Origin: Macrostomum lignano
Lineage: Eukaryota
Direction: 5' to 3'
Assembly: GCA_002269645.1 (NCBI GenBank)
Contig: NIVC01004921.1
Coordinates: 1 to 31,368, forward strand
Length of the DNA stretch: 31,368 nt
Numbering within the stretch: position 1 is the first letter of the stretch; each line of letters begins with the position of its first letter. This document shows, piece after piece, positions 1,329-31,368 of this stretch. Under the pieces are notes generated by a model. The model was given only the letters and a program-made list of their open reading frames with translations, was not told the origin of the DNA and made no database searches. Both the position numbers and the translations under genes were made by a program.

Positions 1329-1441
1329 GTTAATTAGATGGGAGTAGACGGGATCTTTACTTCAGCAGTCCACTCAGGTGCCCAAGTTGATAACCCCTTC
1401 ACAATGCATGTCATTAGCGTGTAATTGAGCTCGACACGCAC

Positions 1442-2593
1442 CTTCAGATAGCCCTGGTTGGCGTAGGTCTTGGCGCACACTGCGCACTGGTGCTTCTTGT
1501 CCGAGTGGTGCACCGGCAGGTGGCGCTTCAAGCTGGTCGGCGTGGCGAAGCTTTTGCCGCACTGCTTGCACACGTACGGCTTTTCTCCCGTGTGCGTCTC
1601 CAGGTGATTGCGCAGGTGGGCAAACAGGTGGAACCGGCGCTGGCAGACGTAGCAGGAGAAGCGCTTCTCCCGGTCCATGCTGAGCATTCGAGCGCGAACC
1701 ACGGCCACCGATGCTCGCTGGTGCTGGTGCTGCTGGTGCTGCTGAAGCAGCTGGCGTTGCTGCTGCTGGAACTGCTGCTGCTGTTGCTGCTGCTGGCGGC
1801 TCATCAGCAGGGTTGAAGCAGCTGGGGACGCTGACGCAGCCATGACCGTCTGCTGCTGCTGCTGCTGCTGCGAAGGCCGACTGGTAGAGGCGGCAGCGGC
1901 AGCGGCGGCGGTCTTCTGTATGGCAGCGCTGACGGGGCCGAAGTCCTGGCCGTGCTTGTCGGACAGGTAGTTGGCCAGCCGGGAGATGGTCGAGTTCAGC
2001 GTTGGCGCGTTGCTGCCGCGGCCGGCGCGCATCAGAGCCGCTCCGCTGCCGGCGCCGTCGTCGTCCTCGTCGGCAACGATCTCTTCCAGCTCGTCGAGTT
2101 CGTCGTCTGTGGCGGCCGAGGTGACCACAACCTCCTGGCCGGCCAGGGTGAACAGCGAGTCCACGGCGGCGTCGTCCACCGAGTCAACCGCAGCCGCCGC
2201 CTCCGCCGCTTCGGCCGCAGCCGCCGCCGCCGCAGCAGCAGCAGCCGCCGAGTTCGCCCCGACAATACGTCGGCCACCGCCAGAGCTCGCAGCCGCCGAC
2301 ACCGCGGTGGGTGTCGCAACATCGAGCGGCTCCTCCTTGACCAGCATGCGAGAGCCGCGGCCGGTGCGGACCTGCGGCCCGCCGGACAAAGACAGGTAGG
2401 TGGCAGCTCCGGCCCTGGGGGCGAACCGGTGCTTCAAGTTGTCCAGCAGCCTGTTGAACTCTTCGTCGTTGCAGCCGGGGCCCCCGCCGCCGCCGCCGCC
2501 GCCGGCGCCAAAGCCAGGGTAGGCGAAGTCGTCAAATACAATCTCCACTTCAGGCTCCTCAATGGGCCGCAACTGCGACTTCCGACTGCTCAT
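1442..2593 (-). CDS. C2H2 (Kruppel-type) zinc-finger transcription factor, coding exon (384 codons); gene continues toward the window start
   Basis: ORF has FSCYVCQRRFHLFAHLRNHLETH, the canonical TGEKPY linker, VCKQCGKSFATPTSLKRHLPVH, and a third finger HQCAVCAKTYANQGYLK cut at AAG|GTGCGT (phase-0 donor at 1441-1440) before its His pair. N-terminal part has poly-Gly, poly-Ala and poly-Gln. ORF residues after 1442 (VRVELN...) are probably intron read-through. Confidence 0.9.
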
Positions 2594-4028: not shown

Positions 4029-4649
4029 GACTCAAATCTGAGCACTCAGACAACCAACTCAAATCTGAGCACTCAAATAACCAACTCAAATCTGAGCATT
4101 CAGACAACCAAAACTCAAATCTGAGCACTCAAATAACCAACTCAAATCTGAGCATTCAGACAACCAACTCAAATCTGAGCACTCAAATAACCAACTCAAA
4201 TCTGAGCATTCAGACAACCAACTCAAATCTGAGCATTCAGACAACCAACTCAAATCTGAGCATTCAGACAACCAACTCAAATCTGAGCATTCAGACAACC
4301 AACTCAAATCTGAGCATTCAGACAACCAACTCAAATCTGAGCATTCAGACAACCAACTCAAATCTGAGCATTCAGACAACCAACTCAAATCTGAGCACTC
4401 AAATAACCAACTCAAATCTGAGCATTCAGACAACCAACTCAAATCTGAGCATTCAGACAACCAACTCAAATCTGAGCACTCAAATAACCAACTCAAATCT
4501 GAGCATTCAGACAACCAACTCAAATCTGAGCACTCAAATAACCAACTCAAATCTGAGCATTCAGACAACCAACTCAAATCTGAGCATTCAGACAACCAAC
4601 TCAAATCTGAGCACTCAGACAACCAACTCAAATCTGAGCACTCAGACAC
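4029..4649. repeat. 27 bp minisatellite CAACTCAAATCTGAGCA(TTCAGAC/CTCAAAT)AAC, about 23 copies
   Basis: Two alternating unit variants; explains the SECSDLSWL-repeat ORF. Confidence 0.97.
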
Positions 4650-4845
4650 ACAAACTAAATAACAGCAGAACCGGACTGAAAAGGCCTGTCAACTTTAGCT
4701 CATAACTAGCAATCTTCGCCCCCCGTTGGGGGACATCTGGATAGAATCTCTGTTCTCTACAAGTAACAAAAAGACAGCCAAATAAAGCCTTCACAAAGAC
4801 GACAGACAAACTGCTCAAATAAAGTGTAATGCAAAAAAAAATCAT

Positions 4846-5396
4846 CCCAAGACAGCAAGCATCCCAAGATAGCAAGCATCCCCCAGATTGCAAGCATCCC
4901 CTAGATAGCAAGCATCCCCCACATAGCAAGCATCCCCCAAATAGCAAGCATCCCCCAGATAGCAAGCATCCCCCCAGATAGCAGGCACCCCCAGATAGCA
5001 AGCACCCCCCAGATAGCAGGCACCCCCCATATAGCAAGCACTCCCCAGATAGCAGGCACCCCCCAGATAGCAAGCATCCCCCAGATAGCAAGCACCCCAG
5101 ATAGCAAGCGACCCCAGATAGCAGGAACCCCCAGATAGCAGGCACCCCCAGATAGCAAGCACACCAGATAGCAAGCACCCCCAGATAGCAAACACCCCAG
5201 ATAGCAAGCACCCCCAGATAGCAAGCACCACCAGATAGCTAGCACCCCCAGATAGCAGGCACCCCCAGATAGCAGGCACCCCCAGATAGCAAGCACCTCC
5301 AGATAGCAAGCACCCCCAGATAGCAAGCACCACCAGATAGCAAGCACCCCCAGATAGCAGGCTCTCCCAGATAGCAAGCACCCCCAGATAGCAGGC
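4846..5396. repeat. 16-18 bp minisatellite CCCCAGATAGCAAGCA(C/T)
   Basis: About 33 units; abuts the next array with no spacer at 5396/5397. A related array lies at 12222-12440. Confidence 0.96.
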
Positions 5397-8300
5397 GACA
5401 TGGTGGCTTTTTACTGTTAGACATGGTGGCTCTTTAATGTTCGACATGGTGGTTCTTTAATGTTCGACATGGTGGCTCTTTACTGTTAGACATGGTGGCT
5501 CTTTAATGTTCGATATGGTGGCACTTTAATGTTTGACATCATGCCAGATTTATGTTCGACATGGTGGCTCTTTAATGTTCGAAATGGTGGCTCTTTTATG
5601 TTCGACATGGTGGCTCTTTAATGTTCGACATGGTGGTTCTTTAATGTTCGACATGGTGGCTCTTTACTGTTAGACATGGTGGCTCTTTAATGTTCGATAT
5701 GGTGGCACTTTAATGTTTGACATCATGCCAGATTTATGTTTGACATGGTGGCTCTTTAATGTTCGACATGGTGGCTCTTTTAGGTTTGACATGGTGGCTC
5801 TTTAATGTTCGACATGGTGGTTCTTTAATGTTCGACATGGTGGCTCTTTACTGTTAGACATGGTGGCTCTTTAATGTTCGATATGGTGGCACTTTAATGT
5901 TTGACATCATGCCAGATTTATGTTTGACATGGTGGCTCTTTAATGTTCGACATGATGGCTCTTTTAGGTTTGACATGGTGGCTCTTTAATGTTCCACATG
6001 GTGGCCCTTTAATGTTCGACATGGTGGCTCTTTATTGTTAGACATGGTGGCTCTTTAATGTTCGATATGGTGGCACTTTAATGTTTGACATCATGCCAGA
6101 TTTATGTTTGACATGGTGGCTCTTTAATGTTTGACATGGTGGCTCTTTTAGGTTTGACATGGTGGCTCTTTAATGTTCCACATGGTGGCCCTTTAATGTT
6201 CGACATGGTGGCTCTTTAATGTCAGACATGGTGGCTCTTTAATGTTCGACATGGTGGCTCTTTAATGTTCGACATGGTTGCTCTTTAATGTTCGAAATGG
6301 TGGCTCCTTAATGTTTGAAATAAAATCACATATATGTTAGACATAAAGTCACATATATGTTTGACATAAAGTCACATATATGTTTGACATAAAGTCACAT
6401 TTATGTTTGACATAAAGTCACATATATGTTTGACATAAAGTCACATATATGTTTGACATAAAGTCACATATATGTTTGACATAAAGTCACATATATGTTT
6501 GACATAAAGTCACATTTATGTTTGACATAAAGTCACATATATGTTTGACATAAAGTCACATATATGTTCGACATGGTGGCTCTTTTTAACATCTGACATG
6601 GTGGCTCTTCTATGTTTAACATGGTGGCTCTTTTATGTTTGACATGGTGGCTCTTTAATGTTCTTCATGGTGGCTCTTTAATGTTCGACATGGTGGCTCT
6701 TTAATGTTCGACATGGTGGCTCTTTAATGTTCGACATGGTTGCTCTTTAATGTTCGAAATGGTGGCTCCTTAATGTTTGAAATAAAGTCACATATATGTT
6801 AGACATGGTGGCTCTTTTTAACATCTGACATGGTGGCTCTTCTATGTTTAACATGGTGGCTCTTTTATGTTTGACATGGTGGCTCTTTAATGTTCTTCAT
6901 GGTGGCTCTTTAATGTTCGACATGGTGGCTCTTTAATGTTCGACATGGTGGCTCTTTAATGTTCGACATGGTTGCTCTTTAATGTTCGAAATGGTGGCTC
7001 CTTAATGTTTGAAATAAAGTCACATATATGTTAGACATGGTGGCTCTTTTTAACATCTGACATGGTGGCTCTTCTATGTTTAACATGGTGGCTCTTTTAT
7101 GTTTGACATGGTGGCTCTTTAATGTTCTTCATGGTGGCTCTTTAATGTTCGACATGGTGGCTCTTTGATGTTCTTCATGGTGGCTCTTTTTTGTTCGACA
7201 TGGTGGCTCTTTTTTGTTCTACATGGTAACTCTTTTATGTTTGATACGGTGGCTTTTTAATGTCTGACATGTTGGCTCTTTTATGTTTGACATGGTGGCT
7301 CTTTAATGTTCGACAAAGTGGCTCTTTAATGTTTGACATGGTGGCTATTGTTTGATATGCTGGCTCTTTAATTTTCGAAATAGTGGCTCTTCAATGTTTG
7401 AAATGGTGGCTCTTTTATGTTCAACATGGTGGCTCTTTTAGGTTTGACATGGTGGCTCTTAAATGTTTCACATGGTGGCTCTTTAATTTTTAACATGGTG
7501 GCTCTTTGATGTTCTTCATGATATAGCTCTTTTATGTTACACATGGTGGCACTTTAATGTTCGACATGGTTGCTCTTTAATGTTTGACATAAAGTCACAT
7601 ATATGTTTGACATGGTGGCTCTTAAATGTTTGACATGGTGGCTCTTTAATGTTCGACATGGTAGCTCTTTTATGTTCGACATGGTGGCTCTTAAATGTTT
7701 GACATGGTGGCTCTTAAATGTTTGACATGGTGGCTCTTTAATATTCTACATGGTGGCTCTTTTATGTTCGACATGGTGGCTCTTTCATGTTCTTCATGGT
7801 ATAGCTCTTTTATGTTAGACATGGTGGCTCTTTAATGTTCGACATAGTGGCTTTTTAAGGTTTGAAATGGTAACTCTTTAATGTTTGACATAAAGTCACA
7901 TATATGTTTGACATGGTGGCTCCTAAATGTTTGACATGGTGGCTCCTAAATGTTTGACATGTTGGCTCTTTTATGTTTGACATGGTGGCTCTTTAATGTT
8001 CGACAAAGTGGCTCTTTAATGTTTGACATGGTGGCTCTTAAATGTTCGACATGGTGGCTCTTTAATGTTCGACATGGTGGCTCTTTAATGTTCGAAATGG
8101 TGGCTCTTTTATGTTCGACATGGTGGCTCTTTAATGTTTGACATAGTGGCTTCTAATTGTTTGACATGGTGGCTCTTTAATGTTCAAAATGGTGGCTCTT
8201 TAATGTTCGAAATGGTGGCTCTTTAATGTTCGAAATGGTGGCTCTTTTATGTTTGACATGGTGGCTCTTTAATGTTCGACATGGTAGCTCTTTTATGTTC

Positions 8301-9010
8301 GACATGGTGGCTCTTAAATGTTTGACATGGTGGCTCTTAAATGTTTGACATGGTGGCTCTTTAATATTCTACATGGTGGCTCTTTTATGTTCGACATGGT
8401 GGCTCTTTCATGTTCTTCATGGTATAGCTCTTTTATGTTAGACATGGTGGCTCTTTAATGTTCGACATAGTGGCTTTTAAGGTTTGAAATGGTAACTCTT
8501 TAATGTTTGACATAAAGTCACATATATGTTTGACATGGTGGCTCCTAAATGTTTGACATGGTGGCTCCTAAATGTTTGACATGTTGGCTCTTTTATGTTT
8601 GACATGGTGGCTCTTTAATGTTCGACAAAGTGGCTCTTTAATGTTTGACATGGTGGCTCTTAAATGTTCGACATGGTGGCTCTTTAATGTTCGACATGGT
8701 GGCTCTTTAATGTTCGAAATGGTGGCTCTTTTATGTTCGACATGGTGGCTCTTTAATGTTTGACATGGTGGCTTCTAATTGTTTGACATGGTGGCTCTTT
8801 AATGTTCAAAATGGTGGCTCTTTAATGTTCGAAATGGTGGCTCTTTAATGTTCGAAATGGTGGCTCTTTTATGTTTGACATGGTGGCTCTTTTATGTTTG
8901 ACCTGGTGGCTCTTTTATGTTTGACATGGTGGCTCTTCTATGTTTGATATGTTAACTCTTTTATGTTCGATATGTTGGCTCTTCTATGTTTGACATTGCG
9001 CTTCTTTGAT
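5397..9010. repeat. 23 bp minisatellite GACATGGTGGCTCTTTAATGTTC with higher-order structure (~3.6 kb)
   Basis: About 155 units; includes an island of the variant TTTGACATAAAGTCACATATATG at ~6320-6565 and higher-order periods of 184, 232 and ~622 bp. Confidence 0.97.
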
Positions 9011-9044
9011 GTTTAGCAGTTTTGTTGTGTTTTTAAGGTGTTTT

Positions 9045-9130
9045 AATAAAAAATATCTTTTTGTACTACTAAGATTCGAACCCAGGTTGCTACAATAGCA
9101 TTCCAGTCTGTTCGCATCAGGGCTATCTCT
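9045..9130 (-). pseudogene. tRNA-derived (SINE-head-like) Pol III module, copy A
   Basis: Minus strand reads TAGCCCTG (A-box-like), then CTGGG-TTCGAAT-CTTAG (B box; T-arm pairs with G-U wobbles), then TTTTTT at 9048-9053. No complete cloverleaf. Confidence 0.6.
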
Positions 9131-10056
9131 TTTCAATTGGAGAACATGAATTGTGGCCCTTATAATTCAATTCTTACAGCAAGTCAATCGGAGTAAAAAG
9201 TTATGACATAATCAATTTCTCAGTCAGCCAGTATCAGTCTCAATTTAAGTTAGCAATATGGTTACGCAATTTAAATCAAGTCGTGTGTGCATTTCTTCGG
9301 CACTGTTTTCAACTTGTTGTGATGCAATCTTTATCACAATCGGAATTCAGTCAGTCAGTTTTTTCTCTAGCATTCTTACAATGCATTTCAAGTCGAAAAT
9401 TTGGCTTGACCTTTGCAAAAAAGCATGTTTTTCGAATATTTAATCCCTTTAACATTGAGCAATTTCTTAGCCAAGATGCATGTACCGTCCCAGGAAAATT
9501 TCTGATCGAATGGTGCAAGTTTGAAGAAAATCGGTTAAGCCAATTTTCTGAAATCTATCGCATAGCTACAGACATTTCATTTTTAGTATATGGGACTAGC
9601 TAAAGTTTTGCCCCCTTCGGGAGCAGAAATAATTAATATTCGTCTAATATAATATACCTTTTAGCAGGAGTACTTTAAGTGTTTTTCTTAAGCTTAAGCT
9701 TAAAATAGGAATTTTTGGAGATCGTTAATAACGCATTTTAGGTAAAACAAAACTATCAACTTTTTACAGTTTTTAGTTTAGAGCCCTGTATATGTCAACG
9801 TGTTTGATAAAAATTATTTTTATCATTTTTGATAAAAAATGGCCTTCGGGGTGGCCAATAAGCAAGGGACGAATCCTTTTAAATGAAAAAAAATTCTTAG
9901 GGAGGGGGGCTAGGAATCGAATTCTCATTTTAATTCCAGGCTTATGTACCAATAAAACATGTTTGTGCAGAATTTTATAACAGACATTGAAATTCAACCA
10001 TACTTGCCTTCTTTCAGAGCTACTTCTACCAGTATGCTTCAGTACGCTACCAGTAC

Positions 10057-10990
10057 CCTTGTAAGCCTTGACATGTCAGCAATCCCCCCCCACAAGCCTT
10101 AACATATCAACTCCCCCCTTGACATCTCAGCAATGCTCCCACAAGCCTTGAAATCTTAAAAAATCTGTCTATTTTCTAACCCTAACCCTAACCCTAACCC
10201 TAACCCTAAAGCATTGAAATTTCAGTAATTCTCTCTAAGAGTCTATAGCACTACTACAGCATTATAGCGATTCCCTGCAAGCCTCGACATCGTAGGGATT
10301 CCCAAATGAATCTCTTAACTTTGACATGAAGCTTCTTTTTTTTTACATTACGCTTTTTCTATCAGCGATCCCTCCCGTGAGGAGCCGACAAATAATGTAA
10401 TAACTTTTTTCCAATAAACTACATGTAGCTTCTGACATTAGCCTTGACATCTCATTTATTCCCCCGTGAGCCTTGACATCTCAGCTATAGATAGATAGAT
10501 AGATTCCCCTCGTAAGCCTTGACATGTCAGCGATGCCCCCATAAACCTTGAAATCTAAAAAATCCCCTGTTAACCTTGAAACGCGCTAAAATCTAACCCT
10601 CAACCCAAACCTGACGTAAACCTAACTTTCACCCAACCTAAAGCCTTGAAATCACAGCAATTCTTCTTCCCTAAGCCTTGGCATTTAAGTGATTCCTTCT
10701 TTAAGAATCACAGCACTATAACGATTCCCTCCAAGCTTTGACATCGTAGCAATTCCCAAATGAATCTTTTAACTTTGACATGACTTTTATTTTATGTATA
10801 CATAGTGCTCCTTTTATTTTTATATGACTCTTCTTCTATTAGCGCCCCCCCACCGTGGCAAGCCAACAAAGAATGCAATAAAAAACTTAAGTAAAGTACA
10901 TGTACTTTGAAGTAGCTTCTGACTTTTGCTTTAACATCTCAGAAACCCCCCTGTAATCTCAGTTATTCTCTGTGAGCCTTGACGTCTCAG
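10057..10990. repeat. Old diverged tandem duplication (~450 bp period) built from eroded CCTTGACAT(C/G)TCAGC motifs
   Basis: GTAAGCCTTGACATGTCAGC at 10061 and 10512; CCCAAATGAATCT(C/T)TTAACTTTGACATGA at ~10301 and ~10755; a (GATA)n microsatellite at the junction (~10487-10504). Confidence 0.75.
10176..10209. repeat. Interstitial telomere-type repeat (CCCTAA)5
   Basis: Five perfect CCCTAA hexamers plus a partial one; decayed counterpart at ~10594-10642. Confidence 0.9.
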
Positions 10991-11169
10991 TAATTCTCCC
11001 CAGCACAGCACTGTACTATAGCTTCATTTAATTTTTATATGACATTTCTTTCATGTCTGACATGACGCTTCTTTTGATTTTTACGTTACGCTTCTTTTAT
11101 TCTTCCATGATGCTTCTTAATTTTTTAAATGACACACTTTCATTAGTTTTTATATGAGGCTTCTATAAT

Positions 11170-12070
11170 TTTTTCATGACGCTTCTATGCTTGTTTACAT
11201 GACGCTTGTATGATTTTTACATGACGCTTCTATGATTGTTTACATGACGCTTGTATGATTGTTTACATGACGCTTCTATGATTTTTACATGACGCTTTTA
11301 TGATTTTTACATGACGCTTCTATGATTTTTTACATGACGCTTCTATGATTTTTACATGACGCTTTTATGATTTTTACATGACGCTTCTATGATTTTTACA
11401 TGACGCTTCTATGATTTTTACATGACGCTTCTATGATTGTTTACATGACGCTTCTATGATTGTATACATGACGCTTCTATGATTGTTTACATGACGCTTC
11501 TATGATTGTATACATGACGCTTCTATGATTGTTTACATGACGCTTTTATGATTGTTTACATGACGCTTCTATGATTTTTACATGACGCTTCTATGATTTT
11601 TACATGACGCTTCTATGATTGTTTACATGACGCTTCTATGATTTTAACATGACGCTTCTATGATTTTTTTACATGACGCTTCTATGATTGTTTACATGAC
11701 GATTGTATGATTGTTTACATGACGCTTGTATGATTTTAACATGACGCTTCTATGATTGTTTACATTACGCTTCTATGATTGCTTGCATGACGCTTCTATG
11801 ATTTTTTATGACGCTTTTATGATTTTAACATGACGCTTCTATGATTTTTTTACATGACGCTTCTATGATTGTTTACATGACGCTTGTATGATTGTTTACA
11901 TGACGCTTTTATGATTTTAACATGACGCTTCTATGATTGTTTACATTACGCTTCTATGATTTTTACATGACGCTTCTATGATTTTTACATGACGCTTCTA
12001 TGATTGTTTACATGACGCTTCTATGATTGTTTACATGACGCTTGTATGATTGTTTACATGACGCTTCCAT
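11170..12070. repeat. 22-23 bp minisatellite ACATGACGCTTCTATGATT(G)TTT
   Basis: About 40 units; degenerate on the left (~11060-11180), homogeneous to the right. Confidence 0.96.
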
Positions 12071-12099
12071 AATTTTTTTTGTCTTGGCGTTAAAAGGCT

Positions 12100-12186
12100 T
12101 TAATTAAAAAAACTCTACTCTCTAAAAATTCGAACCATCGTCCCTGCATTTAGCAGTTTAGTCTGTTTACCTCTAGGCTAGCTCTC
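12100..12186 (-). pseudogene. tRNA-derived Pol III module, copy B
   Basis: Minus strand reads TAGCCTAGAG (12171-12180, identical to copy C), CTGCTAA, GGTTCGAAT (12128-12136), then a T7 run at 12106-12112. Confidence 0.55.
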
Positions 12187-12221
12187 ATGAATTTTAGTCA
12201 TTACCCCTAAATAGAAAATAT

Positions 12222-12440
12222 TCCCAAGACAGCAAGCATACCCCCAGTAGCAAGCATCCCCTAATACTCCTAGCAAGCATCTACCCAGATAGCAAGCATC
12301 TGCAGATAGCAAGCATCTTGCAGATAGCAAGCATCTTGCAGATAGCAAGCATACCCCAAATAATGTAGAAGCATCCTTCCAGATAGCAAGCATCCTGCAC
12401 ATAGCAAGAATCCCTAAATAGCAAGCATCCCTGGATAGAA
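12222..12440. repeat. Degenerate CAGATAGCAAGCAT minisatellite, same family as 4846-5396
   Basis: Both arrays open with the same variant CCCAAGACAGCAAGCAT. Confidence 0.88.
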
Positions 12441-12463
12441 ATAATCCTATACATGTAGCCAAG

Positions 12464-14044
12464 CTTATCAAGCGCAGTAATCCTTGGCTATCGAGTGCAG
12501 TAATCCTTGGTTTATTAATAGCAATAATCCATGGCTTATCGAGTGCAGTAATCCTTGGTTTATTAATAGCAATAATCCTTGGCTTATCGAGTGCAGTAAT
12601 TCATGGTTTATTAATAGCAATAATCCTTGGCTTATCGAGTGCAGTAATCCTTGGTTTATTAATAGCAATAATCCATGCCTTATCGAGTGCAGTAATCCTT
12701 GGTTTGCCAAGAGCAATAGTCCTTGGCTTATCGAGTGCAGTAATCCTTGGTTTGCCAAGTGCATAATCCTTGGTTTATTAATAGCAATAATCCTTGGTTT
12801 ATCGAGTGCAGTAATCCTTGGTTTATTAATAGCAATAATCCTTGGCTTATCGAGTGCAGTAATCCTTGGTTTATTAATAGCAATAATCCATGGCTTATCG
12901 AGTGCAGTAATCCTTGGTTTGCCAAGAGCAATAGTCCTTGGCTTATCGAGTGCAGTAATCCTTGGTTTGCCAAGAGCAATAGTCCTTGGTTTATTGAGTG
13001 CAGTAATCCTTGGTTTATTAATAGCAATAATCCTTGGCTTATCGAGTGCAGTAATCCTTGGTTTGCCAAGTGCATAATCCTTGGTTTATTAATAGCAATA
13101 ATCCTTGGCTTATCGAGTGCAGTAATCCTTGGTTTATTAATAGCAATAATCCTTGGTTTATCGAGTGCATTAATCCTTGGTTTATTAATAGCAATAATCC
13201 TTGGCTTATCGAGTGCAGTAATCCTTGGTTTATTAATAGCAATAATCCTTGGCTTATCGAGTGCAGTAATCCTTGGTTTGCCAAGAGCAATAGTCCTTGG
13301 TTTTTTGAGTGCAGTAATCCTTGGTTTATTAATAGCAATAGTCCTTGGTTTATTGAGTGCAGTAATGCTTGGTTTATTAATAGCAATAATCCTTGGCTTA
13401 TCGATTGCAGTAATCCTTGGTTTGCCAAGTGCATAATCCTTGGTTTATTAATAGCAATAATCCTTGGTTTATCGAGTGCAGTAATCCTTAGTTTATTAAT
13501 AGCAATAATCCTTGGCTTATCGAGTGCAGTAATCCTTGGTTTATTAATAGCAATAATCCATGGCTTATCGAGTGCAGTAATCCTTGGTTTGCCAAGAGCA
13601 ATAGTCCTTGGTTAAGTGCAGTAATCCTTGGTTTAATAGCAATAGTCCTTGGCTTATCGAGTGCAGTAATCCTTGGTTTATTAATAGCAATAATCCTTGG
13701 TTTATCGAGTGCAGTAATCCTTGGTTTATTAATAGCAATAATCCTTGGCTTATCGAGTGCAGTAATCCTTGGTTTATTAATAGCAATAATCCATGGCTTA
13801 TGAGTGCAGTAATCCTTGGTTTATTAATAGCAATAATCCTGGCTTATGAGTGCAGTAATCTGGTTTATTAATAGCAATAATCCTTGGCTTATCGAGTGCA
13901 GTAATCCTGGTTTATTAATAGCAATAATCCTGGCTTATCGAGTGCAGTAATCCTTGGTTTAAGAGCAATAATCCTTGGCTTATCGAGTGCAGTATTCCTT
14001 GGTTTGCCAAGAGCAATAATCCTTAGCTTATCGAGTGCAGTAAT
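12464..14044. repeat. 24 bp minisatellite with a 48 bp dimer (ATCCTTGGCTTATCGAGTGCAGTA / ATCCTTGGTTTATTAATAGCAATA)
   Basis: Regular A/B alternation, with minor variants TTGCCAAGAGCAATAG and the 23 bp TTGCCAAGTGCATA. Confidence 0.97.
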
Positions 14045-14081
14045 CTAAGTGTTTTTATTTAGTCCTTTAATAAAAGCTTTT

Positions 14082-14178
14082 AATAAAAAATTTTACACTA
14101 CTACTTTTAAACTACTTAGATTCGAACCCAGGTCGCTGCATTAGCAGTCTGGTCTGCTCAGCTCTAGGCTAGCTCTCA
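14082..14178 (-). pseudogene. tRNA-derived Pol III module, copy C
   Basis: Minus strand reads TAGCCTAGAGCTGAGC (A-box-like), CTGCTAA (Ser-GCU-type anticodon loop, stem unpaired), CCTGGGTTCGAATC (B box 14119-14128), then TTTTTT at 14085-14090. Confidence 0.62.
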
Positions 14179-16583
14179 TCGAAGTTATCAGTGAATTTGT
14201 ACCACTTATATAATTCAACACTCACACCAAGTCAGGTAGAGTAAAAAGTCACGCGAAGCAGTTATGACATAATCAATTTCTTAGGCAAGTCAGTACCAGT
14301 GTCTATGAAAGTTAACAATATGGTTACGTAATATAAATTCAGTACTGCACTATACTTTCACCCTCAAAGCTGTGACGCAATTCAATTGAGTGTCAAATTC
14401 AGCCAGTACACAGAAGATAAATAAAGTGTATTGTGATGCAATCTATTTCAGAATCAGAATTCAACCAGTCAGATTTTTCTCTAGCATTCTTACAATGCAT
14501 TTCAGGTCGAAAGAGCTGCTTGACCTTTGCAAAAAATCATGTTTTTCGAATATTTAATCCCTTTAACATTGAGCAATTTCTTAGCCAATATGCATGTACC
14601 GTCCCGGGAAAATTTCTGATCGAATGGTGCAAGTTTGAAGAAAATCGGTTGAGCCGTTCGGGAGAAAATCAATTACAAGCAAGCAACCAAGCATTTCATT
14701 TTTAGTATATTAGAAGACTTAGAGATTTAGTATATTTAGAAGTGGAGCCCGAGAAACTTATGTACACAAATGATATGTCATTCTGCTCACAGTGCCACCA
14801 GAAAGCTGGGCTTGGCGAAAAAGTGACAAAAAATAGACTTGTAAATAAGTTAGGGACTTTTTTGTCAACTGAAGCTCATAAAGAAGAGTCCCGGGCGGCT
14901 TCACTTTAAAGGGCTTAAGTTGACAAGCCCTTTGTTTTTAGAACCTGATCCTAACTCTTACCTAACTAGAGATACTCGTAAAACTTGACTGTGGGTAGAG
15001 ACTATCCTCAATTATATTGGATTTCACTCTCTTCAAAGAGCGTTGATGGACAAGAAACAAGATAAAGGGTTGTTAACAACACACTATAACAGACTCGATA
15101 TTCAAGTAAATTCAATTGATCGCTATCGGTATAGTGACATTCGAGAGCATTATCTTTGAGCAGATGAGCATAGTTTTGAAGGCACGCCATGGGCTCCACA
15201 TACACACACTGATGGATTTTTTTTCGATTTATTCCCATATAGAGAGGCTGCACAAGGCAGCTTCATCCGCTAGCCTAATTGATATTCCCAGCCTTCCTGT
15301 CCCAGTAACTACTGCAAATCCCACACTATATAGCTGCGACTCTCGCCGAGTTCGATGGGAGAAACTAGGGAGACCCCCTCCCTCCTACAAGCAGCGTTTC
15401 GAACTGTGCGGCAAAATCGATCTAGTGAGCAAATGAACCGTGACGAGATCTGGGAGGTGCAGCGGTGCGCGCGGGACCTTCTTATTCTACTTAAAGAGAG
15501 AAAAGTCAGAGAAGACATAAAGGCCCGTAACAATCATAGAAAATGAGTCAAAGTTTACAGAAAATATAGTAGGACCTAGCTAAATGATGAAATTGCTGCT
15601 CCCAGAAGTCTGCTGCGCCACAGGACTTTTTACCGTAGACAAACTTTTTTGCTTGATTTTTGCGCTCTATGAATACATTGAACGCTTGCAGTGCCAACAG
15701 ATTGCCAACAAAACTATTTAATCCACACGTTTTACTACGTGTTATATATATATTATTTACAGCCAGTCCCTGATGCTAAATTACAGAGTACCGCAGCGTG
15801 TGTATGAGTGCGAAATGGGCAGAATTGCCCCAGCGCTGGTTGAGATGATGTCGCCGAAGCCCTCCCGTAAATACACTTTACGTGTTTACCGTAAGTGAAC
15901 ACGGTAACTTACCGTTAACTTACGCTGTACACCGTAAATACAATATTTATCTATTAAGTAGAAATTTTAATTTCTTTAGACCTAACAGTGGATGCAGGGG
16001 CTTGTAGATGGTTGGAAAAAAACTTATACTATATATCATTCCTGTGATTAAGGGCGATGGTACAGCAATGACAATATACCTATGCTGATTTTCCATTACC
16101 CTTTAAGACATGGGACAGAATTAATTGCATATAGGCAACCAAGAAAATTTTTAGGATTTTTTTCCACCAGAGAAGCAATAAAAAAGCATAAGCCTCCATC
16201 TGTAGCCACTTCGGACTAAACTGGGAACATAAAGCGTCAAGTAAGATAGAAATTTATGACGGGTAAAAAGCTGCGCGAAGATATTTTGCTTCGCCTTAGG
16301 AGGTCATAATAATCCTGCTGAAGACCTATCCAATGCTGTCATGACCCCTACCGCGAAGAAATAATAAAAAAGTATTCATCGTTTCTGCATCAGCATTGCA
16401 ATATTCAACTTTTTTAAACCGAATTCCCACTGATCGCTACAAACGGGGAAGAATGGGTTGTTTGATAAAACCCCCAGGTGTGCAAGAGCAGGCATTGTCG
16501 AAACTCTCCCATTCGCTCTTAGGAAAAATTTTTCTGAATAAATTTTGCATAAATTCCCTCATAACAATCTAATAACCTAATAA

Positions 16584-16724: not shown

Positions 16725-17450
16725 GATTGCGCTTGGGGAAGTTGACCCCGCTAATATTGTGCTTGGGGAGGACATGCCCCCCTAATAGTTTTGCTACGGG
16801 AGGCGACGTACCCCTTAATATTGTTGCTTGGGAGGACATGACCCCGCTAAGATTGTGCTTGGGAGGACATGACTCCGCTAAGATTGTGCTTGGGGAGGAC
16901 ATGACTCCACTAATATTGTGCTTGGGAGGACATGACTCCGCTAATATTGTTCTTGGGAGGACATGACCCCGCTAAGATTGTGCTTGGGAGGACATGACCC
17001 CGCTAAGATTGTGCTTGGGAGACATGACTCCGCTAAGATTGTGCTTGGGGAGGACATGACTCCGCTAATATTGTGCTTGGGGAGGACATGACTCCGCTAA
17101 TATTGTGCTTGGGGAGGACATGACTCCGCTAATATTGTGCTTGGGGAGGACATGACTCCGCTAATATTGTGCTTGGGGAGGACATGACTCCGCTAATATT
17201 GTGCTTGGGAGGACATGACTCCGCTAATATTGTGCTTGGGAGGACATGACTCCGCTAATATTGTGCTTGGGGAGGACATGACTCCGCTAAGATTGTGCTT
17301 TGGGATGACATGACCCCGCTAATATTGTGCTAGGGATGACATGACCCCGCTAATATTGTGCTTGGGGAGGACATGACCCCGCTAATATTGTGCTTGGGAT
17401 GACATGACCCCGCTAATATTGTGCTTGGGAGGACTTGATCTCAATAATAC
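16725..17450. repeat. 31-33 bp minisatellite GACATGAC(T/C)CCGCTAA(T/G)ATTGTGCTTGGG(G)AG
   Basis: About 22 units; measured period is 32 bp (17041 to 17073). Confidence 0.96.
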
Positions 17451-18364
17451 TGTGCCCTAATCCTTAATCTGAAAGGTCAAGACTCCATTAATCCAACGGA
17501 GCATCGGTTCTGCCTAATAATTGCATCGCTGCAGAGTTTGAGTGCAATCTCATTAACCGCGCACACGTGGCCCTAAGGGTCAAATGCTGAGCAAACTGAG
17601 TAGAGAAGAGAGGGGAATAGGGAAGGAGAGAGAGGGGGAATGAGGATTTGCTTTCATAGCCACGAGAGGAATTTTTTCCCTTCGGGTCGGGTCGGGGCCC
17701 TACTGGGTTACATAATATGCAATAGAAAGGTATGAAAGAGGCATTTGGCCCGTCTCGTGGTATAAAGAAGACTGAAAGCGGAATTTTAAAAGCAGAGTGC
17801 AGCACAAGCACAGAGCGGAGGAAGCAGCCTAGCTAGTGGATTTCACCCGCTGATTGACACCTGAGAATTCATTAAAACCCCCTCCCCCAACCCATTCACC
17901 CATTTCTTCTGCTTCTGCTTGCGGCTTCCTGGCCGAAACAGCAGCAATCTTTACTACACTTTGCTGGGCATATAAAATCAGAGAGAAACGAAAGGCTTTG
18001 AAATGTATACACTGGTATGGCGAAATATGTATTTAGCAATAACCGTAGGAAACTATTGCATGAGAATAAGCAAAGGGGCATAACGGTGCCAACAAACACA
18101 GAACGATACATTTCTTATGCTTTTATAAAACATGGAACCGAAAGCGCTGCGGGTGCTTCAACAACAAAATCATTGCAGTGAAAAAGCAGACTTGTTGCAG
18201 AAATCTCTAATATTACATGTATATAACTATCTAGTTGCCGTGAAAAATGACTGAATTTTGTGTCACCAATTAGCATTGTGAATCCAAGGAGAAGTACAGG
18301 CACTAGATTGATTAATAGAGAGATACACGTGGCTACGTACTACTGTGTCTAACTGCGTTACAAC

Positions 18365-19140
18365 CGGGTTTCATATCTGGATCAAGCTGGGTCACACCAG
18401 AGTTTCATATCTGGGTCAAACTGGGTCACACCAGGCTTCATATCTGAGTCAAGCTGGGTCACACCAGGCTTCATATCTGAGTCAAACTGGGTCACACCAG
18501 GGTTTCATATCTTAGTCAAGCTGGGTCACACCAGGGTTTCATATCTAAGTCAAGCTGGGTCACACCAGGCTTCATATCTGAGTCAAGCTGGGTCACACCA
18601 GGCTTCATATCTGGGTCAAACTGGGTCACACCAGGGTTTCATATCTTAGTCAAGCTGGGTCACACCAGGGTTTCATATCTTAGTCAAGCTGGGTCACACC
18701 AGGCTTCATATCTGAGTCAAGCTGGGTCACACCAGGCTTCATATCTGGGTCAAACTGGGTCACACCAGGGTTTCATATCTTAGTCAAGCTGGGTCACACC
18801 AGGGTTTCATATCTTAGTCAAGCTGGGTCACACCAGAGTTTCATATCTGGGTCAAACTGGGTCACGCCAAAATTTCATATCTGGGTCAAGCCGGGTCATA
18901 CTAGGGTTTCATATCTGGGTCAAGCTGGGTCACACCAGAGTTTCATATCTGGGTCAAACTGGGTCACACCAGAGTTTCATATCTGGGTCAAACTGGGTCA
19001 CACCAGAGTTTCATATCTGGGTCAAACTGGGTCACACCAGAGTTTCATATCTGGGTCAAACTGGGTCACGCCAAAATTTCATATCTGGGTCAAGCCGGGT
19101 CATACTAGGGTTTCATATCTGGGTCAAGCTGGGTCACACC
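18365..19140. repeat. 33-34 bp minisatellite CTGGGTCACACCAG(G/A)GTTTCATATCTGGGTCAA(G/A)
   Basis: About 23 units, starting about 42 nt past the stop codon of the LDLa gene. Confidence 0.96.
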
Positions 19141-19181: not shown

Positions 19182-19695
19182 TCACTCCAAGGTGAGCAGA
19201 GCTGATTGCAGTGAGCTGCACAACGCCGCCAGAGCGAGCAGCAGGCAGGCGGGGCAGCCACTCAACACAGCTGACCGGTTTGGTCGCCAAATGCCGTCGC
19301 TAAACAAACCCGAAGCTTCGCCGTTGTCATAGCGACAATCGGCTTCATCTGACGAGATTAATGAAGTAGAATTGCTTCTCCGAGTGCCGCTGCTATTGCT
19401 GCCTCTGTTGCTGTTAAAGCAGTCGTCCAGTCCGTTGCAGCGGTGCGTGCTGTACACGCATTCCAGACTGCTGCCGCCGCCGCACCAGAAGCCACCGCGA
19501 CTCTCGCAGAGGAAGGCCCGCTCAGCGGCGGTGGACACGTCGGCTCTGAACTCTGCGTAGACGTGAACGGAGATTCGGGTCACGAAAGGCGAGGACGCTG
19601 GAGACGGTGGCGACGGCGAGAGGGCCACGGAGGCTCCGTCGCTGCCTTTGCCGGGACGGTCCGGCGCAGTGCGGTGCCAGGTGAGGCTGGTGAAT
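19182..19695 (-). CDS. Last exon of a secreted LDL-receptor class A (LDLa) domain protein with a hydrophobic C-terminus (possible GPI-anchor signal)
   Basis: Polypyrimidine tract then CCTCTGCAG|A acceptor at 19696/19695. The frame reads FTSLTW...AFLCESRGGFWC...LECVYSTHRCNGLDDC...SDEADC (six Cys plus the DC/SDE signature) and ends CPACLLLALAALCSSLQSALLTLE*. Codons are mostly C/G-ending. Confidence 0.8.
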
Positions 19696-19794: not shown

Positions 19795-20135
19795 AAGGAT
19801 TTGTGTGAATGCTAATTAGGATTTATGTGAATGCTAAGCAGGATTTGTGTGAATGCTAAGTACGATTTATGTGAATGCTCAGCAGGATTTGTGTGAATGC
19901 TAAGCAGGATTTGTGTGAATGCTAAGCAGGATTTGCGTGAATGCCAAGTAGGATTTGCGTGAATACCAAGTAGGATTTGCGTGAATTCCAAGCAGGATTT
20001 GTGTGAATGCCAAGTAGGATTTGCGTGAATGCCAAGCAGGATTTGCGTGAATGCTAAGTAGGATTTGTGAATGCCAAGCAGGATTTGCGTGAATGCCAAG
20101 CAGGATTTGCGTGAATGCCAAGCAGGATTTGTGTG
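19795..20135. repeat. 22 bp intronic minisatellite GCAGGATTTG(C/T)GTGAATGC(C/T)AA
   Basis: About 15 units inside the 19696-20251 intron. Confidence 0.95.
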
Positions 20136-20251
20136 AAGCAGGATTGCTTCAATGGATCAGGCATTTGCCAAGTTTGTAATGCCAAGCGTGAGCCGCAGGG
20201 TTTGCGTGAATGCCAAGCTACCAAAACTTGCGCAGCCAGAACCAGCCTCAC

Positions 20252-20482: not shown

Positions 20483-21716
20483 TCCGACGCTTCTGTTGAC
20501 TTTGCTTAGTTATAAGCTGTCGGCATTGCTCAGTGCTCTGCTCACACTAAGCATATTGTATATATATGTCTCTGCAGGCATACAGTAAGCCAGGCTAACA
20601 ACTATCTCGAATGTAGTGTTCCGTGTTTTTTGGCAGACGGAGCTTTTCACGCTGCTAAATAACAGGCTTGGGGAGGGGGGGCATTAGATTTGATGGCCAC
20701 ACAATGCCGAGTGATTTATACCCTACACCCAACATAAGCGAATGGGCCACTGCCTCTGCCCGGCCAATAGGGAGGCTGGTAGCCAGCCCCGGCTAACGGA
20801 ATCCCAACTCCGCCTCTTCCTGTGTACTCGTAGAAGCGAAAATGGGAGGGGAAACTGCCGCAGCCTTTATTATTGCCGCTGGGAAACGGATGGCCGGGAC
20901 GAAAACTGATGAAGGGGTCAAAAAGAGGGAGAAGAGAGATGAGGCAGCCTGGCCAGAGGATCTGGGATCGGGAACAGACAGACATACGGAAAGTGATGGA
21001 GAAAATGGAGGCTGAGAGGCCGAGCCACCAATCACTCAGCCGAGGCGATGCGCACACAACAAGCGCGCAGACACAGCCTGGGCTAGGCCCGGAGGTCTCG
21101 GCATCACTCAATGGACAACTGGCACGCGGGCCCTGATAGCAGCAAGGGTATGCAATTGGGGGAACTGAAGCGGGAGGGGAGCAGCAGAGCCTTGCGGCCA
21201 TTCCACTCTGGGGATAGTTGCAGACTGCTAGCTTAGCAGACTGGTTAGTTGGCAAATGGCGACAGGGCGATGAACGGCGAGATAATAATAATAAACAAAC
21301 CCGGCCCAAATTTATCAGCCAAGTTTATTCTTCATTATGTAGGCTGAGAGACTTTAGGTCGTGTCACAAGAGAGCAAGAAACCGGACACAAGAGCATCAC
21401 AATTAATGCAATTTACTACTGAAGCAGTCAAGCAGGTGAAGTGGAGTTTGTCCAAACTCAAAATCACCAACTCAGAGTTCTGGAGACTTATTGACTATTG
21501 ATTTTGCATTGAATTGTACTCGACTGACCCGCCCTTTAGACGAATGTACTGCTCATTCCTTATTCCTTATATCACTGTTTTTTTCGGTTGATTTCTTAAA
21601 GTATACGAGCCCTGAATATGTCATAGTGATAATAATAATAATCGCGACAGGAGCGATGTTTAGGACAGAGGCAGACAGTTGCGCGCTCATGGCACATGCA
21701 CCGATCCTCATTGCGG

Positions 21717-22163
21717 CTTGTGGTACTATGGCCTGACTTCTTTGCACGCTTGTGGCAATATGGCCTGACTTCTTTGCACCGCTTGTGGCAATATGGCCTG
21801 ACTTCTTTGCACGCTTGTGGCAATATGACCTGATTTCATTGCACGCTTGTGGCAATATGACCTGATTTCTTTCCACGCTTGTGGCAATATGGCCTGATTT
21901 CATTGCACGCTTGTGGCAATATGGCCTGATTTCATTGCGCTTGTGGCAATATGGCCTGATTTCTTTCCACGCTTGTGGCAATATGGCCTGATTTCTTTGA
22001 CGCTTGTGGCAATATGGCCTGATTTCTTTGACGCTTGTGGCAATATGGCCTGATTTCATTGCACGCTTGTGGCAATATGGCCTGATTCATTGCACGCTTG
22101 TGGCACTATGGCCTGATTTCCTTGCGCGCTTGTGGCACTATGGCCTGATTTACTTGCGCGCTT
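21717..22163. repeat. ~31-32 bp minisatellite GCTTGTGGCAATATGGCCTGA(T/C)TTC(A/T)TTGCAC
   Basis: About 14 units. Confidence 0.95.
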
Positions 22164-30967: not shown

Positions 30968-31101
30968 GTATGTTTGCTGGTCTGATAATTTGCTTTTAAT
31001 TTAAATTATAGTAGTTAGTTGATAGGTAATGGCAATGCTAAGTTTTTAATGTTAAGCTTAAGCTAGTGATATAGCATGTCCTAATTTTTAGTTAATATAT
31101 A

Positions 31102-31368
31102 CAGTGTTGGGCACCAGTCCATTAATAAGCATTAATAAGCATTAAGATTTTTTATTAATGTTAACAGACTGCCATTAAGATTTTTTTGAACTAACAGATT
31201 AACAAATTTACATTAATAATTTTGTGAGTTAATGACAAATTCATCGTTAACATTAATGGCAATGTCAATGACCAAAGACACAAAGAAAAAACAAGAATAT
31301 GTCTGACAAGATGTTATATTATAACATTACAAATGTTTTTGAATTTACCTAAATGCCTTATTCATCTT
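31102..31368 (+). mobile_element. Second copy of the hAT-like MITE (left end, truncated by the window)
   Basis: Starts CAGTGTTGGGCACCAGTCCATTAATAAGCATTAATAAGC and aligns with 24570-24840. Confidence 0.88.

What the first reader, a model, noticed from the sequence alone, without database searches (positions are those of the whole stretch)
9045..14178. Recurrent tRNA-derived Pol III module pointing into each minisatellite payload
Three copies (9045-9130, 12100-12186, 14082-14178; minus strand) carry an A-box-like TAGCC(T/C), a CTGCTAA loop like the tRNA-Ser(GCU) anticodon loop (copies B and C), a GGTTCGAAT B box about 33 nt after the A box, and a T6-7 run. Each is followed within tens of bases by a different minisatellite array (23-, 22- and 24-mers). 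A SINE-like head embedded in a Helitron at a fixed position next to an expanding array suggests a composite Helitron/SINE/minisatellite element. The module could make a ~90-100 nt Pol III RNA, read through into the repeat, or act as a TFIIIC boundary or replication-pause site promoting array expansion. I do not recognise this exact architecture; novelty is unverified.
Basis: partly seen in the sequence, partly recalled or inferred. Interest (0 to 1): 0.8.

Follow-up and report, generated by a model that had tools for sequence, protein, structure and literature searches.

The report
Helitron arm with tRNA-like block
The three "modules" are one inherited ~90-bp stretch in the left arm of a minisatellite-carrying Helitron transposon, present as three head-to-tail copies in a Macrostomum flatworm genome; it has tRNA-gene-like promoter motifs but fails every tRNA model, so the architecture is a known kind and the Pol III idea is untested.

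Summary
Three homologous ~90-nt blocks on the minus strand carry an A-box-like TAGCC, an exact GGTTCGAAT B box 44 nt downstream and a T6-7 run. Each lies 28-51 bp from a 22-24-bp minisatellite.

They are not independent recurrences. They belong to three head-to-tail copies of one non-autonomous canonical Helitron family:
- 5'-TCCCATATACTAAAAATGA, then a ~465-bp left arm ending in the block
- minisatellite 1, then a 17-mer minisatellite 2
- a right arm, a GC hairpin and CTAG-3'
- CTAG|TC junctions between copies

A Macrostomum lignano contig holds a 90%-identical copy with the same layout. Adjacency to arrays is therefore by descent, as in other minisatellite-carrying Helitrons (oyster HINEs, Xenopus Heli2Xen, Paramecium).

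tRNA ancestry is only weakly supported:
- ARAGORN and the Rfam tRNA model find nothing.
- Predicted folds are no more stable than shuffled sequence.
- Only copy C gives a borderline in-register match to a tRNA sequence profile (E=0.042).
- Copy B has a T5 run inside its B box, and copy A has a weaker A box.

Most likely the block is a decayed captured tRNA-like fragment, or a chance motif, carried passively. Pol III or TFIIIC activity is possible but unshown. This is a new member of a known kind, of modest interest.

The parts
4706..9595 (-). Element A: the only copy with both Helitron ends in the window (4890 bp), from 5'-TCCCATATAC to GATTGCTAG-3'
   Evidence: Left terminal sequence at 9577-9595. 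3' end GTCCCCCAACGGGGGGCGAAGATTGCTAG followed by T. No terminal inverted repeats.
9131..9595 (-). Left arm of element A, including a 225-bp block (9317-9541) that is 93% identical to element C
9045..9130 (-). Module A: A-box-like TAGCCCTGATG at 9115-9125, B box at 9072-9082, T6 at 9048-9053
5396..8996 (-). Minisatellite 1 of element A: 23-mer, about 156 copies
   Evidence: The same 23-mer has only about 19 copies in the M. lignano copy.
4846..5393 (-). Minisatellite 2 of element A: 17-mer CCCCAGATAGCAAGCAC
4706..4845 (-). Right arm of element A, with GC hairpin at 4718-4734 and terminal CTAG at 4706-4709
9596..12200 (-). Element B, 5'-truncated just upstream of its module. Its 3' end is a hairpin (9609-9625) plus CTAG (9596-9599), abutting element A's TC.
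12100..12186 (-). Module B: A box TAGCCTAGAGG at 12170-12180, CTGCTAA at 12150-12156, B box at 12126-12136, T7 at 12106-12112, plus an extra T5 at 12124-12128 overlapping the B box
11031..12077 (-). Minisatellite 1 of element B: 22/23-mer, related to the 23-mer of element A
12201..14714 (-). Element C: 5' end TCTAATATACTAAAAATGA. It is 3'-truncated after its 17-mer array and fused to element B.
   Evidence: Comparison with the L001 junction.
14082..14178 (-). Module C: A box TAGCCTAGAGC at 14161-14171, CTGCTAA at 14141-14147, B box at 14118-14128, T6 at 14085-14090
12465..14045 (-). Minisatellite 1 of element C: 24/48-mer, unrelated to the 22/23-mers. The same array type occurs in M. lignano at L001 19615-21873.
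12215..12447 (-). Minisatellite 2 of element C: 17/18-mer of the same family as 4846-5393

Best explanation
The region holds three head-to-tail copies, on the minus strand, of one family of non-autonomous canonical (HLE1-type) Helitrons from a Macrostomum flatworm genome.

Each copy has this layout: a 5'-TC left end, a ~465-bp left arm, a 22-24-bp minisatellite, a 17-bp minisatellite, a short right arm, a GC hairpin and CTAG-3'. The 'module' is simply the last ~90 bp of the left arm. Every copy therefore has it next to its array by descent.

Shown here: the element anatomy, the termini, the tandem CTAG|TC junctions, the homology of the copies, a second locus with the same layout, and large differences in array length between homologous copies.

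Inferred:
- The elements are moved in trans by a RepHel transposase (rolling-circle or peel-and-paste transposition).
- Tandem copies arise from missed 3'-end recognition or concatemer formation.
- The arrays grow, shrink and are replaced by slippage or unequal exchange while being carried as payload.
- The tRNA-gene-like motifs (A box, anticodon-loop-like CTGCTAA, B box and oligo-T in tRNA register) are most simply the decayed relic of a tRNA gene plus terminator captured into the left arm. It is no longer a tRNA and there is no evidence that it is selected.
For: Termini:
- Left terminal sequence TCCCATATACTAAAAATGA at 9577-9595, with a 2-mismatch copy at 14696-14714; 0.03 expected by chance.
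- Hairpin followed by 9-10 nt and CTAG, then T or TCC, at 4706-4734 and 9596-9625, and in L001.
- No terminal inverted repeats.
- These match the published definition of HLE1 (PMC11417382).

Homology of the copies:
- A and C are homologous from TTTTAATAAAAAA to the left end, about 550-640 bp.
- B shares the module and about 10 nt beyond it.

Second locus: M. lignano contig NIVC01000245.1 has the order 23-mer array, module, left arm, CTAG|TCC junction, right arm, 17-mer array, 24-mer array. It is 90% identical over 992 aligned bases.

Arrays change after copying: about 156 versus about 19 copies of the same 23-mer.

tRNA likeness in register: module C is the best hit in 53 kb to a profile of 18 E. 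coli tRNAs. It matches profile positions 26-62 with E=0.042. The composite motif is expected 0.007 times per window.

Helitrons made largely of minisatellites are documented (PMC7492417; PMC12001565; PMC13085455).
Against: - Only four module copies (effectively three lineages) could be examined.
- No RepHel partner was identified.
- The A^T target site is seen only at the 3' side (CTAG|T). The 5' flank of element C is not an A, and no empty site is available.
- tRNA ancestry is weak. ARAGORN and the Rfam tRNA model fail. Predicted stems are broken and folds are no more stable than shuffles (z -0.33 to +0.38). No pair shows compensatory change.
- The A-type copies (window A and L001 copy) match the tRNA profile only over the T loop.
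- By my estimate, the invariant 9-nt B box is not significantly longer than expected for three lineages at 75-80% identity.
- Function of the block cannot be excluded.
Confidence: 0.62

Rival explanations
1. Chance motif. The block is ordinary Helitron internal sequence that happens to contain a B-box-like 10-mer and a loose A-box-like pentamer. It has no tRNA ancestry and no Pol III role. The element anatomy is the same as in the best explanation.
For: - No tRNA is called by ARAGORN at usable thresholds.
- There is no Rfam tRNA match at E<=10 in 131-141-nt searches.
- There is no stable fold or covariation.
- GGTTCGANTY alone is expected 0.22 times per window.
- The A-type copies (window A and L001 copy) lack CTGCTAA and have a weaker A box.
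Against: - The composite of A box, spacing, B box and oligo-T is expected only 0.007 times per window.
- Copy C aligns in register with tRNA profile positions 26-62 and is the top hit in 53 kb (E=0.042).
- By my reading, T8, A14, the Y32-U33 loop and G53-C61 fall at canonical tRNA spacing.
Confidence: 0.25
2. Active Pol III unit or TFIIIC site. The A and B boxes recruit TFIIIC and Pol III. The block then makes an ~80-95-nt RNA ending at the oligo-T, or acts as a boundary or replication-pause site that favours array instability next to it.
For: - The B box GGTTCGAATCT matches the consensus at 10 of 11 positions in A, C and L001.
- The A box matches 7 of 9 specified positions in B and C.
- A-to-B spacing is 44 nt, and T6-T8 lies 27-40 nt (my count) after the first base of the B box.
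- TAGCC, GGTTCGAAT and TTTTT.ATTAAA are among the invariant runs in the four-copy alignment.
Against: - There are no expression or binding data.
- Copy B has T5 overlapping its B box, which would end transcription early.
- Copy A has a degraded A box.
- The block is less conserved between A and C (about 79%) than the 225-bp block further up the arm (93%).
- Eight other minisatellites in the window and five in L001 lie far from any such block, so the block is not needed for arrays.
- No clear gradient of array homogeneity toward the block was seen.
Confidence: 0.12
3. Independent insertions of a tRNA-derived SINE next to pre-existing arrays. This is the literal 'recurrent module' reading.
For: Only the motif resemblance to a SINE head.
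Against: - Homology extends well beyond the block on both sides in A, C and L001.
- There is no SINE body, tail or target-site duplication.
- An oligo-T follows directly after the B-box region.
- No stand-alone copy exists in 53 kb.
Confidence: 0.02

Closest known systems
Non-autonomous canonical Helitrons (HLE1 / Helitron1), including tandem head-to-tail Helitron arrays
   Same: 5' TC, a 3' GC hairpin followed by about 10 nt and CTAG, T after the 3' end, no terminal inverted repeats, no coding capacity, and CTAG|TC head-to-tail junctions with truncated inner copies (definition in PMC11417382; tandem Helitrons with truncated inner copies are noted in PMC7492417).
   Different: No autonomous partner was identified, and the A at the 5' target site was not seen. 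The family itself could not be checked against Repbase or Dfam.
Minisatellite-carrying Helitron-like elements: oyster Cg_HINE and Drosophila DINE-1 type HINEs (Helentron group), Xenopus Heli2Xen / Helitron-N2_XT, Paramecium Helitrons built as left end, satellites, right end
   Same: The layout is left arm, one or two consecutive tandem-repeat arrays, short right arm with a 3' stem-loop. Related flanks are combined with different arrays, and array length varies between copies (PMC7492417; PMC12001565; PMC13085455).
   Different: HINEs have subterminal inverted repeats and insert between T and T, whereas these elements have HLE1-type ends and no inverted repeats. The repeat units here are short (17-24 bp). 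DINE-1 was explicitly reported to lack Pol III promoter or tRNA-like sequences (PMC2374699). I found no report of a tRNA-gene-like block in such elements.
tRNA genes and pseudogenes, and tRNA-derived SINE heads (type 2 Pol III promoters)
   Same: A-box-like and B-box motifs 44 nt apart, an anticodon-loop-like CTGCTAA in register in B and C, and an oligo-T downstream.
   Different: There is no cloverleaf, and ARAGORN and Rfam do not recognise it. It is not at the 5' end of an element, and it has no SINE body, tail or target-site duplication. It is embedded 465 bp inside a DNA transposon arm.

Membership tests
Canonical Helitron (HLE1), non-autonomous | 5' end starts with TC | tested here: met
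   TCCCATATAC (element A, 9595 downward), TCCTATATAC (L001) and TCTAATATAC (element C).
Canonical Helitron (HLE1), non-autonomous | 3' end is a short GC-rich hairpin followed by CTRR | tested here: met
   Hairpins at 4718-4734 and 9609-9625, and in L001, each followed by 9-10 nt and then CTAG.
Canonical Helitron (HLE1), non-autonomous | Insertion between host A and T, without target-site duplication | tested here: inconclusive
   CTAG is followed by T at element A's 3' end. The base before element C's 5' end is not A, and there is a partial duplicate of the left end there. No empty site is available.
Canonical Helitron (HLE1), non-autonomous | No terminal inverted repeats | tested here: met
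   The best match between the 5' 60 nt and the reverse complement of the 3' 120 nt is no better than shuffles (68% of shuffles score at least as high).
Canonical Helitron (HLE1), non-autonomous | Termini shared with an autonomous element that encodes RepHel | not testable with these tools
   No Rep or helicase ORF is in the window. The host genome could not be searched.
Helentron / HINE (HLE2) | 11-18-nt (sub)terminal inverted repeats and T-T insertion site | tested here: not met
   No inverted repeats between the ends. The ends are TC...CTAG.
Helentron / HINE (HLE2) | Central tandem-repeat array between a left and a right module, with a 3' stem-loop | tested here: met
   This feature is shared with minisatellite-bearing HLE1 elements, so it does not decide membership.
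tRNA gene or pseudogene | Cloverleaf recognised by tRNA models | tested here: not met
   ARAGORN finds none, and at a 60-70% threshold gives only inconsistent calls. The Rfam tRNA model gives no match at E<=10 for A, B or C. Fold z-scores are about 0.
tRNA gene or pseudogene | Internal A and B boxes at tRNA spacing, plus an oligo-T terminator | tested here: met
   B and C match the composite pattern, which is expected 0.007 times per window. A has a degraded A box, and B has a premature T5.
tRNA gene or pseudogene | Sequence similarity to tRNAs along the molecule | tested here: inconclusive
   nhmmer with a profile of 18 E. coli tRNAs: copy C scores 9.6 bits, E=0.042, over profile positions 26-62. 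The other copies match only the T loop, with E from 0.6 to 9.
tRNA-derived SINE | tRNA-related head at the 5' end of a short retroposon with a body, an A-rich or simple-repeat tail, and target-site duplications | tested here: not met
   About 465 bp of conserved Helitron arm lie upstream, and an oligo-T terminator and the arrays lie downstream. No stand-alone copy was found.

The most novel reading that the evidence does not exclude
A Helitron family has domesticated or captured a working type 2 Pol III unit (A box, B box, terminator) at the inner edge of its left arm. Every transposition would then seed a new TFIIIC/Pol III site, or a small-RNA gene, directly beside a hypervariable minisatellite. 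TFIIIC binding or Pol III-replication conflicts there would contribute to array instability.
Probability: 0.1. Interest if true: 0.6.

Novelty: new member of a known kind. Interest (0 to 1): 0.3.

Why it matters
It shows that minisatellites in this repeat-rich flatworm genome are spread and diversified as the payload of a canonical Helitron family, as already seen in oysters, flies, frogs and ciliates. That helps explain local assembly and annotation difficulty. It also gives a concrete family (left end, right end, arm) to catalogue.

The tRNA-gene-like block is a curiosity. If it were shown to bind TFIIIC or be transcribed, Helitrons would join SINEs as vehicles that scatter Pol III sites. 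Nothing here shows that.

Tried and rejected
- Fetching more copies through spurious ORFs: the left-arm ORF and concatenated array ORFs gave no protein hits.
- Exact-pattern scans of metagenome and prokaryote genome contigs for the arm and for the block found nothing.
- The open frame in the 225-bp conserved arm block has no Pfam match. A search of 1.8 billion representative proteins gave only two low-complexity repeat proteins, which I judge spurious. I dropped the idea of a captured gene fragment.
- Rfam on the whole window returned only weak matches (all far below family thresholds), none at the modules and mostly in minisatellite arrays or the coding trinucleotide repeats.
- A profile of the four blocks found no further diverged copy near the other arrays. 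A weak GGTTCGATT site at L001 12233-12251 is not tRNA-like on inspection.
- Helentron/HINE classification was rejected because there are no subterminal inverted repeats.
- Array identity to its consensus along each array showed no clear polarity toward the block.
- Literature searches for a tRNA-like or Pol III module in Helitrons, and for Macrostomum Helitrons or satellites, found nothing relevant.


Full report
**Observation**

Reading 8800-14500 and aligning the three stretches on the minus strand confirms three homologous blocks. Exact GGTTCGAAT occurs three times in the 31-kb window, all in these blocks. Positions are as follows:

| Feature | Copy A | Copy B | Copy C |
|---|---|---|---|
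| B box | 9072-9082 | 12126-12136 | 14118-14128 |
| A-box-like element | 9115-9125 | 12170-12180 | 14161-14171 |
| CTGCTAA | absent | 12150-12156 | 14141-14147 |
| Oligo-T | T6, 9048-9053 | T7, 12106-12112 | T6, 14085-14090 |

The A-box-like element reads TAGCCCTGATG in A and TAGCCTAGAG(G/C) in B and C. It starts 44 nt upstream of the B box. Tandem Repeats Finder places a 23-mer array at 5396-8996, a 22/23-mer at 11031-12077 and a 24-mer at 12465-14045, each ending 28-51 bp from the oligo-T.

A composite pattern (TRGCNNR, 25-50 nt, GGTTCGANTY, up to 60 nt, T5) is expected 0.007 times per first-order Markov simulation of the window. It is met by B and C but not A. The B box alone is expected 0.22 times.

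**Source and a second locus**

The zinc-finger ORF at 1334-2593 (-) has its best relative in Macrostomum lignano (56% identity). The DNA around that relative is locus L001, from contig NIVC01000245.1. It turned out to contain the same repeats:
- Window 8585-9569 matches L001 17807-18789 at 90% identity.
- The 17-mer and 24-mer arrays recur at L001 19051-19492 and 19615-21873.

The window is therefore Macrostomum DNA. The exact species and assembly are not established, and the family is multi-copy.

**Anatomy**

Copies A and C are homologous from TTTTAATAAAAAA, through the block, to ...CATTTCATTTTTAGTATAT. That is about 550-640 bp, and it includes a 225-bp stretch at 93% identity.

On the minus strand this shared unit begins TCCCATATACTAAAAATGA at 9577-9595, with a 2-mismatch copy at 14696-14714. 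Only 0.03 matches are expected by chance.

Immediately upstream of element A's TC lies GCTCCCGAAGGGGGCAAAACTTTAGCTAG. L001 has GGCGCCCCGAAGGGGGCCGCACTAGATTGCTAG|TCCTATATAC. Downstream of A's 17-mer array lies GTCCCCCAACGGGGGGCGAAGATTGCTAG|T, with CTAG at 4706-4709.

These are the defining ends of canonical Helitrons: 5' TC and a short 3' hairpin followed by CTRR (PMC11417382). There are no terminal inverted repeats.

Read on the minus strand, each element therefore has this order:
1. left end
2. ~465-bp left arm, whose last ~90 bp is the block
3. oligo-T and ATTAAA
4. minisatellite 1 (22-24-mer)
5. minisatellite 2 (17-mer CCCCAGATAGCAAGCAC on the plus strand)
6. right arm of about 140-230 bp
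7. hairpin and CTAG

The three elements in the window are:
- **Element A** (9595 to 4706, 4890 bp) is the only copy with both ends.
- **Element B** is 5'-truncated about 10-15 nt upstream of its block. It ends in CTAG at 9596-9599, directly abutting A.
- **Element C** is 3'-truncated after its 17-mer array and fused to B near 12190-12215. L001 shows the intact version of such a junction: 17-mer array, right arm, hairpin, CTAG|TCC, left arm, block, 23-mer array.

Head-to-tail Helitrons with truncated inner copies are a known pattern (PMC7492417).

**Is the block tRNA-derived?**

Tests against tRNA ancestry:
- ARAGORN finds no tRNA in the window, in L001 or in the isolated blocks. At 60-70% thresholds it gives only mutually inconsistent calls.
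- Rfam's tRNA model gives no match at E<=10 on the whole window or on 131-141-nt slices around A, B or C.
- Minimum-free-energy folds are no more stable than shuffles (z from -0.33 to +0.38).
- The four-copy consensus fold has 10 pairs and none shows a compensatory change.

Tests for tRNA ancestry:
- I extracted 18 class-I E. coli tRNAs with ARAGORN from K-12 loci and built a sequence profile. Copy C is its best hit in window plus L001: 9.6 bits, E=0.042, collinear with profile positions 26-62, which cover the anticodon arm to the T loop. The other copies match only the T loop, with E from 0.6 to 9.
- By my direct reading, T8-A9-G10-C11, A14, the C32-U33...A37-A38 loop and G53-C61 fall at canonical tRNA spacing in B and C. 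The acceptor, D and anticodon stems do not pair.

Signs of decay:
- Copy B has a T5 run overlapping its B box.
- Copy A has lost the A14-equivalent base.
- The block is less conserved between A and C (about 79%) than the 225-bp block further up the arm (93%).
- With three effective lineages at 75-80% identity, I estimate that an invariant 9-mer is not significantly long.

My reading is that tRNA descent is plausible at roughly even odds. It would be as a tRNA gene with its own terminator rather than a SINE head, because an oligo-T follows at once and the block lies 465 bp inside the element. There is no evidence of selection or function.

**The arrays**

- The unit of array A nearest the block (GACATTGCGCTTCTTTGATGTTT) is clearly related to B's unit; 0 of 300 shuffles score as high. 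C's 24-mer is unrelated to both. The family therefore carries at least two array types at the same site, as in oyster HINEs, where related flanks combine with different repeats.
- Homologous copies differ about 8-fold in array length: about 156 versus about 19 copies of the 23-mer. The arrays therefore change after copying.
- Eight other minisatellites in the window (129-1326, 4030-4660, the 17-mer arrays at 4846-5393 and 12215-12447, 16743-17438, 18343-19140, 19796-20137, 21708-22163) and five in L001 have no block within 100 bp. The block is not needed for arrays in this genome.
- No clear gradient of array homogeneity toward the block was seen.

**Mechanism**

Shown here are the anatomy, the homology, the tandem junctions and the array-length differences.

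The rest is inferred from established Helitron biology. A RepHel transposase supplied in trans recognises the left and right ends. Missed recognition of the 3' end, or concatemer formation, gives the CTAG|TC tandems. Slippage and unequal exchange remodel the internal arrays.

The block rides along passively. If it were transcribed by Pol III, T6-T8 would stop transcription before the array, so read-through is unlikely.

**Comparison with known systems, and novelty**

Helitrons made largely of minisatellites are documented in Drosophila, bivalves, bats, Xenopus, zebrafish and Paramecium. This is another such family, of the HLE1 type, in a flatworm.

I found no report of a tRNA-gene-like block in a Helitron. 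DINE-1 was explicitly reported to lack one. However, I had no access to Repbase, Dfam or SINEBase, or to the host genome.

Verdict: a new member of a known kind, interest about 0.3. The Pol III/TFIIIC reading remains possible (about 10%) and is testable.

**Dead ends**

- Protein-space searches with arm and array ORFs found nothing usable.
- Metagenome and prokaryote genome pattern scans found nothing.
- Literature searches on Macrostomum repeats found nothing relevant.

Noticed in passing
window 9317-9541, 14431-14655; L001 18536-18760: A 225-bp block in the Helitron left arm is 92-93% identical among copies, well above the rest of the arm. One plus-strand frame is open in all three copies. 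There are no Pfam or credible protein homologues, and substitutions are not biased to third codon positions.
   Followed up: partly
window 10176-10205 (and degenerate around 10595-10650): An interstitial telomere-type repeat (CCCTAA)5 lies inside element B. It sits within a roughly 450-bp unit present twice (10117-10329 and 10517-10783, 88-89% identity) that is built of degenerate AAGCCTTGACATCTCAGC-like repeats.
   Followed up: partly
window 9600-9860: Two hairpins of the Helitron right-end type (9609-9625 and about 9841-9858) are separated by about 220 bp of AT-rich sequence that L001 lacks. This could be an insertion, a duplication, or a fragment of a fourth element between B and A.
   Followed up: partly
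window 14715-14770: Just upstream of element C's 5' end there is a partial second copy of the left terminal sequence (CTTCTAAATATACTAAATC).
   Followed up: no
window 1334-2593 (-): A GC-rich (about 60%) exon encodes a C2H2 zinc-finger protein rich in poly-Q and poly-A. Its best relative is M. lignano BOX15_Mlig023465g1 (56% identity). The ORF probably reads into an intron at its 3' end.
   Followed up: partly
window 129-1326, 4030-4660, 16743-17438, 18343-19140, 19796-20137, 21708-22163: Six further minisatellites (15-, 27-, 32-, 34-, 22- and 32-mers) have no block nearby. The 32-mer at 16743-17438 shows weak similarity to the 22/23-mer (ACATGAC.C.GCT; shuffle p about 0.007). Whether they belong to other Helitron families is unknown.
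   Followed up: partly
window 24557-24831 and 31090-31367; 24852-25038 and 25216-25402: About 280-bp direct repeats (88% identity) lie 6.5 kb apart in a very AT-rich stretch (25-30% GC) without ORFs of 90 aa or more. They may be the long terminal repeats of a degraded element. A nearby 187-bp duplication is 93% identical.
   Followed up: no
window 19182-19628 (-): An ORF has a weak match to the LDL-receptor class A domain (E=0.005, below the Pfam threshold). It is probably an exon of a host gene.
   Followed up: no
L001 10882-11410: A (CTAT)~130 microsatellite lies within the span of the M. lignano zinc-finger gene, presumably in an intron.
   Followed up: no
L001 17806-18234 and its left flank: The M. 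lignano copy with the 23-mer array goes straight from the array into unique sequence. It has no 17-mer array, right arm or CTAG, so that copy appears to be 3'-truncated.
   Followed up: no
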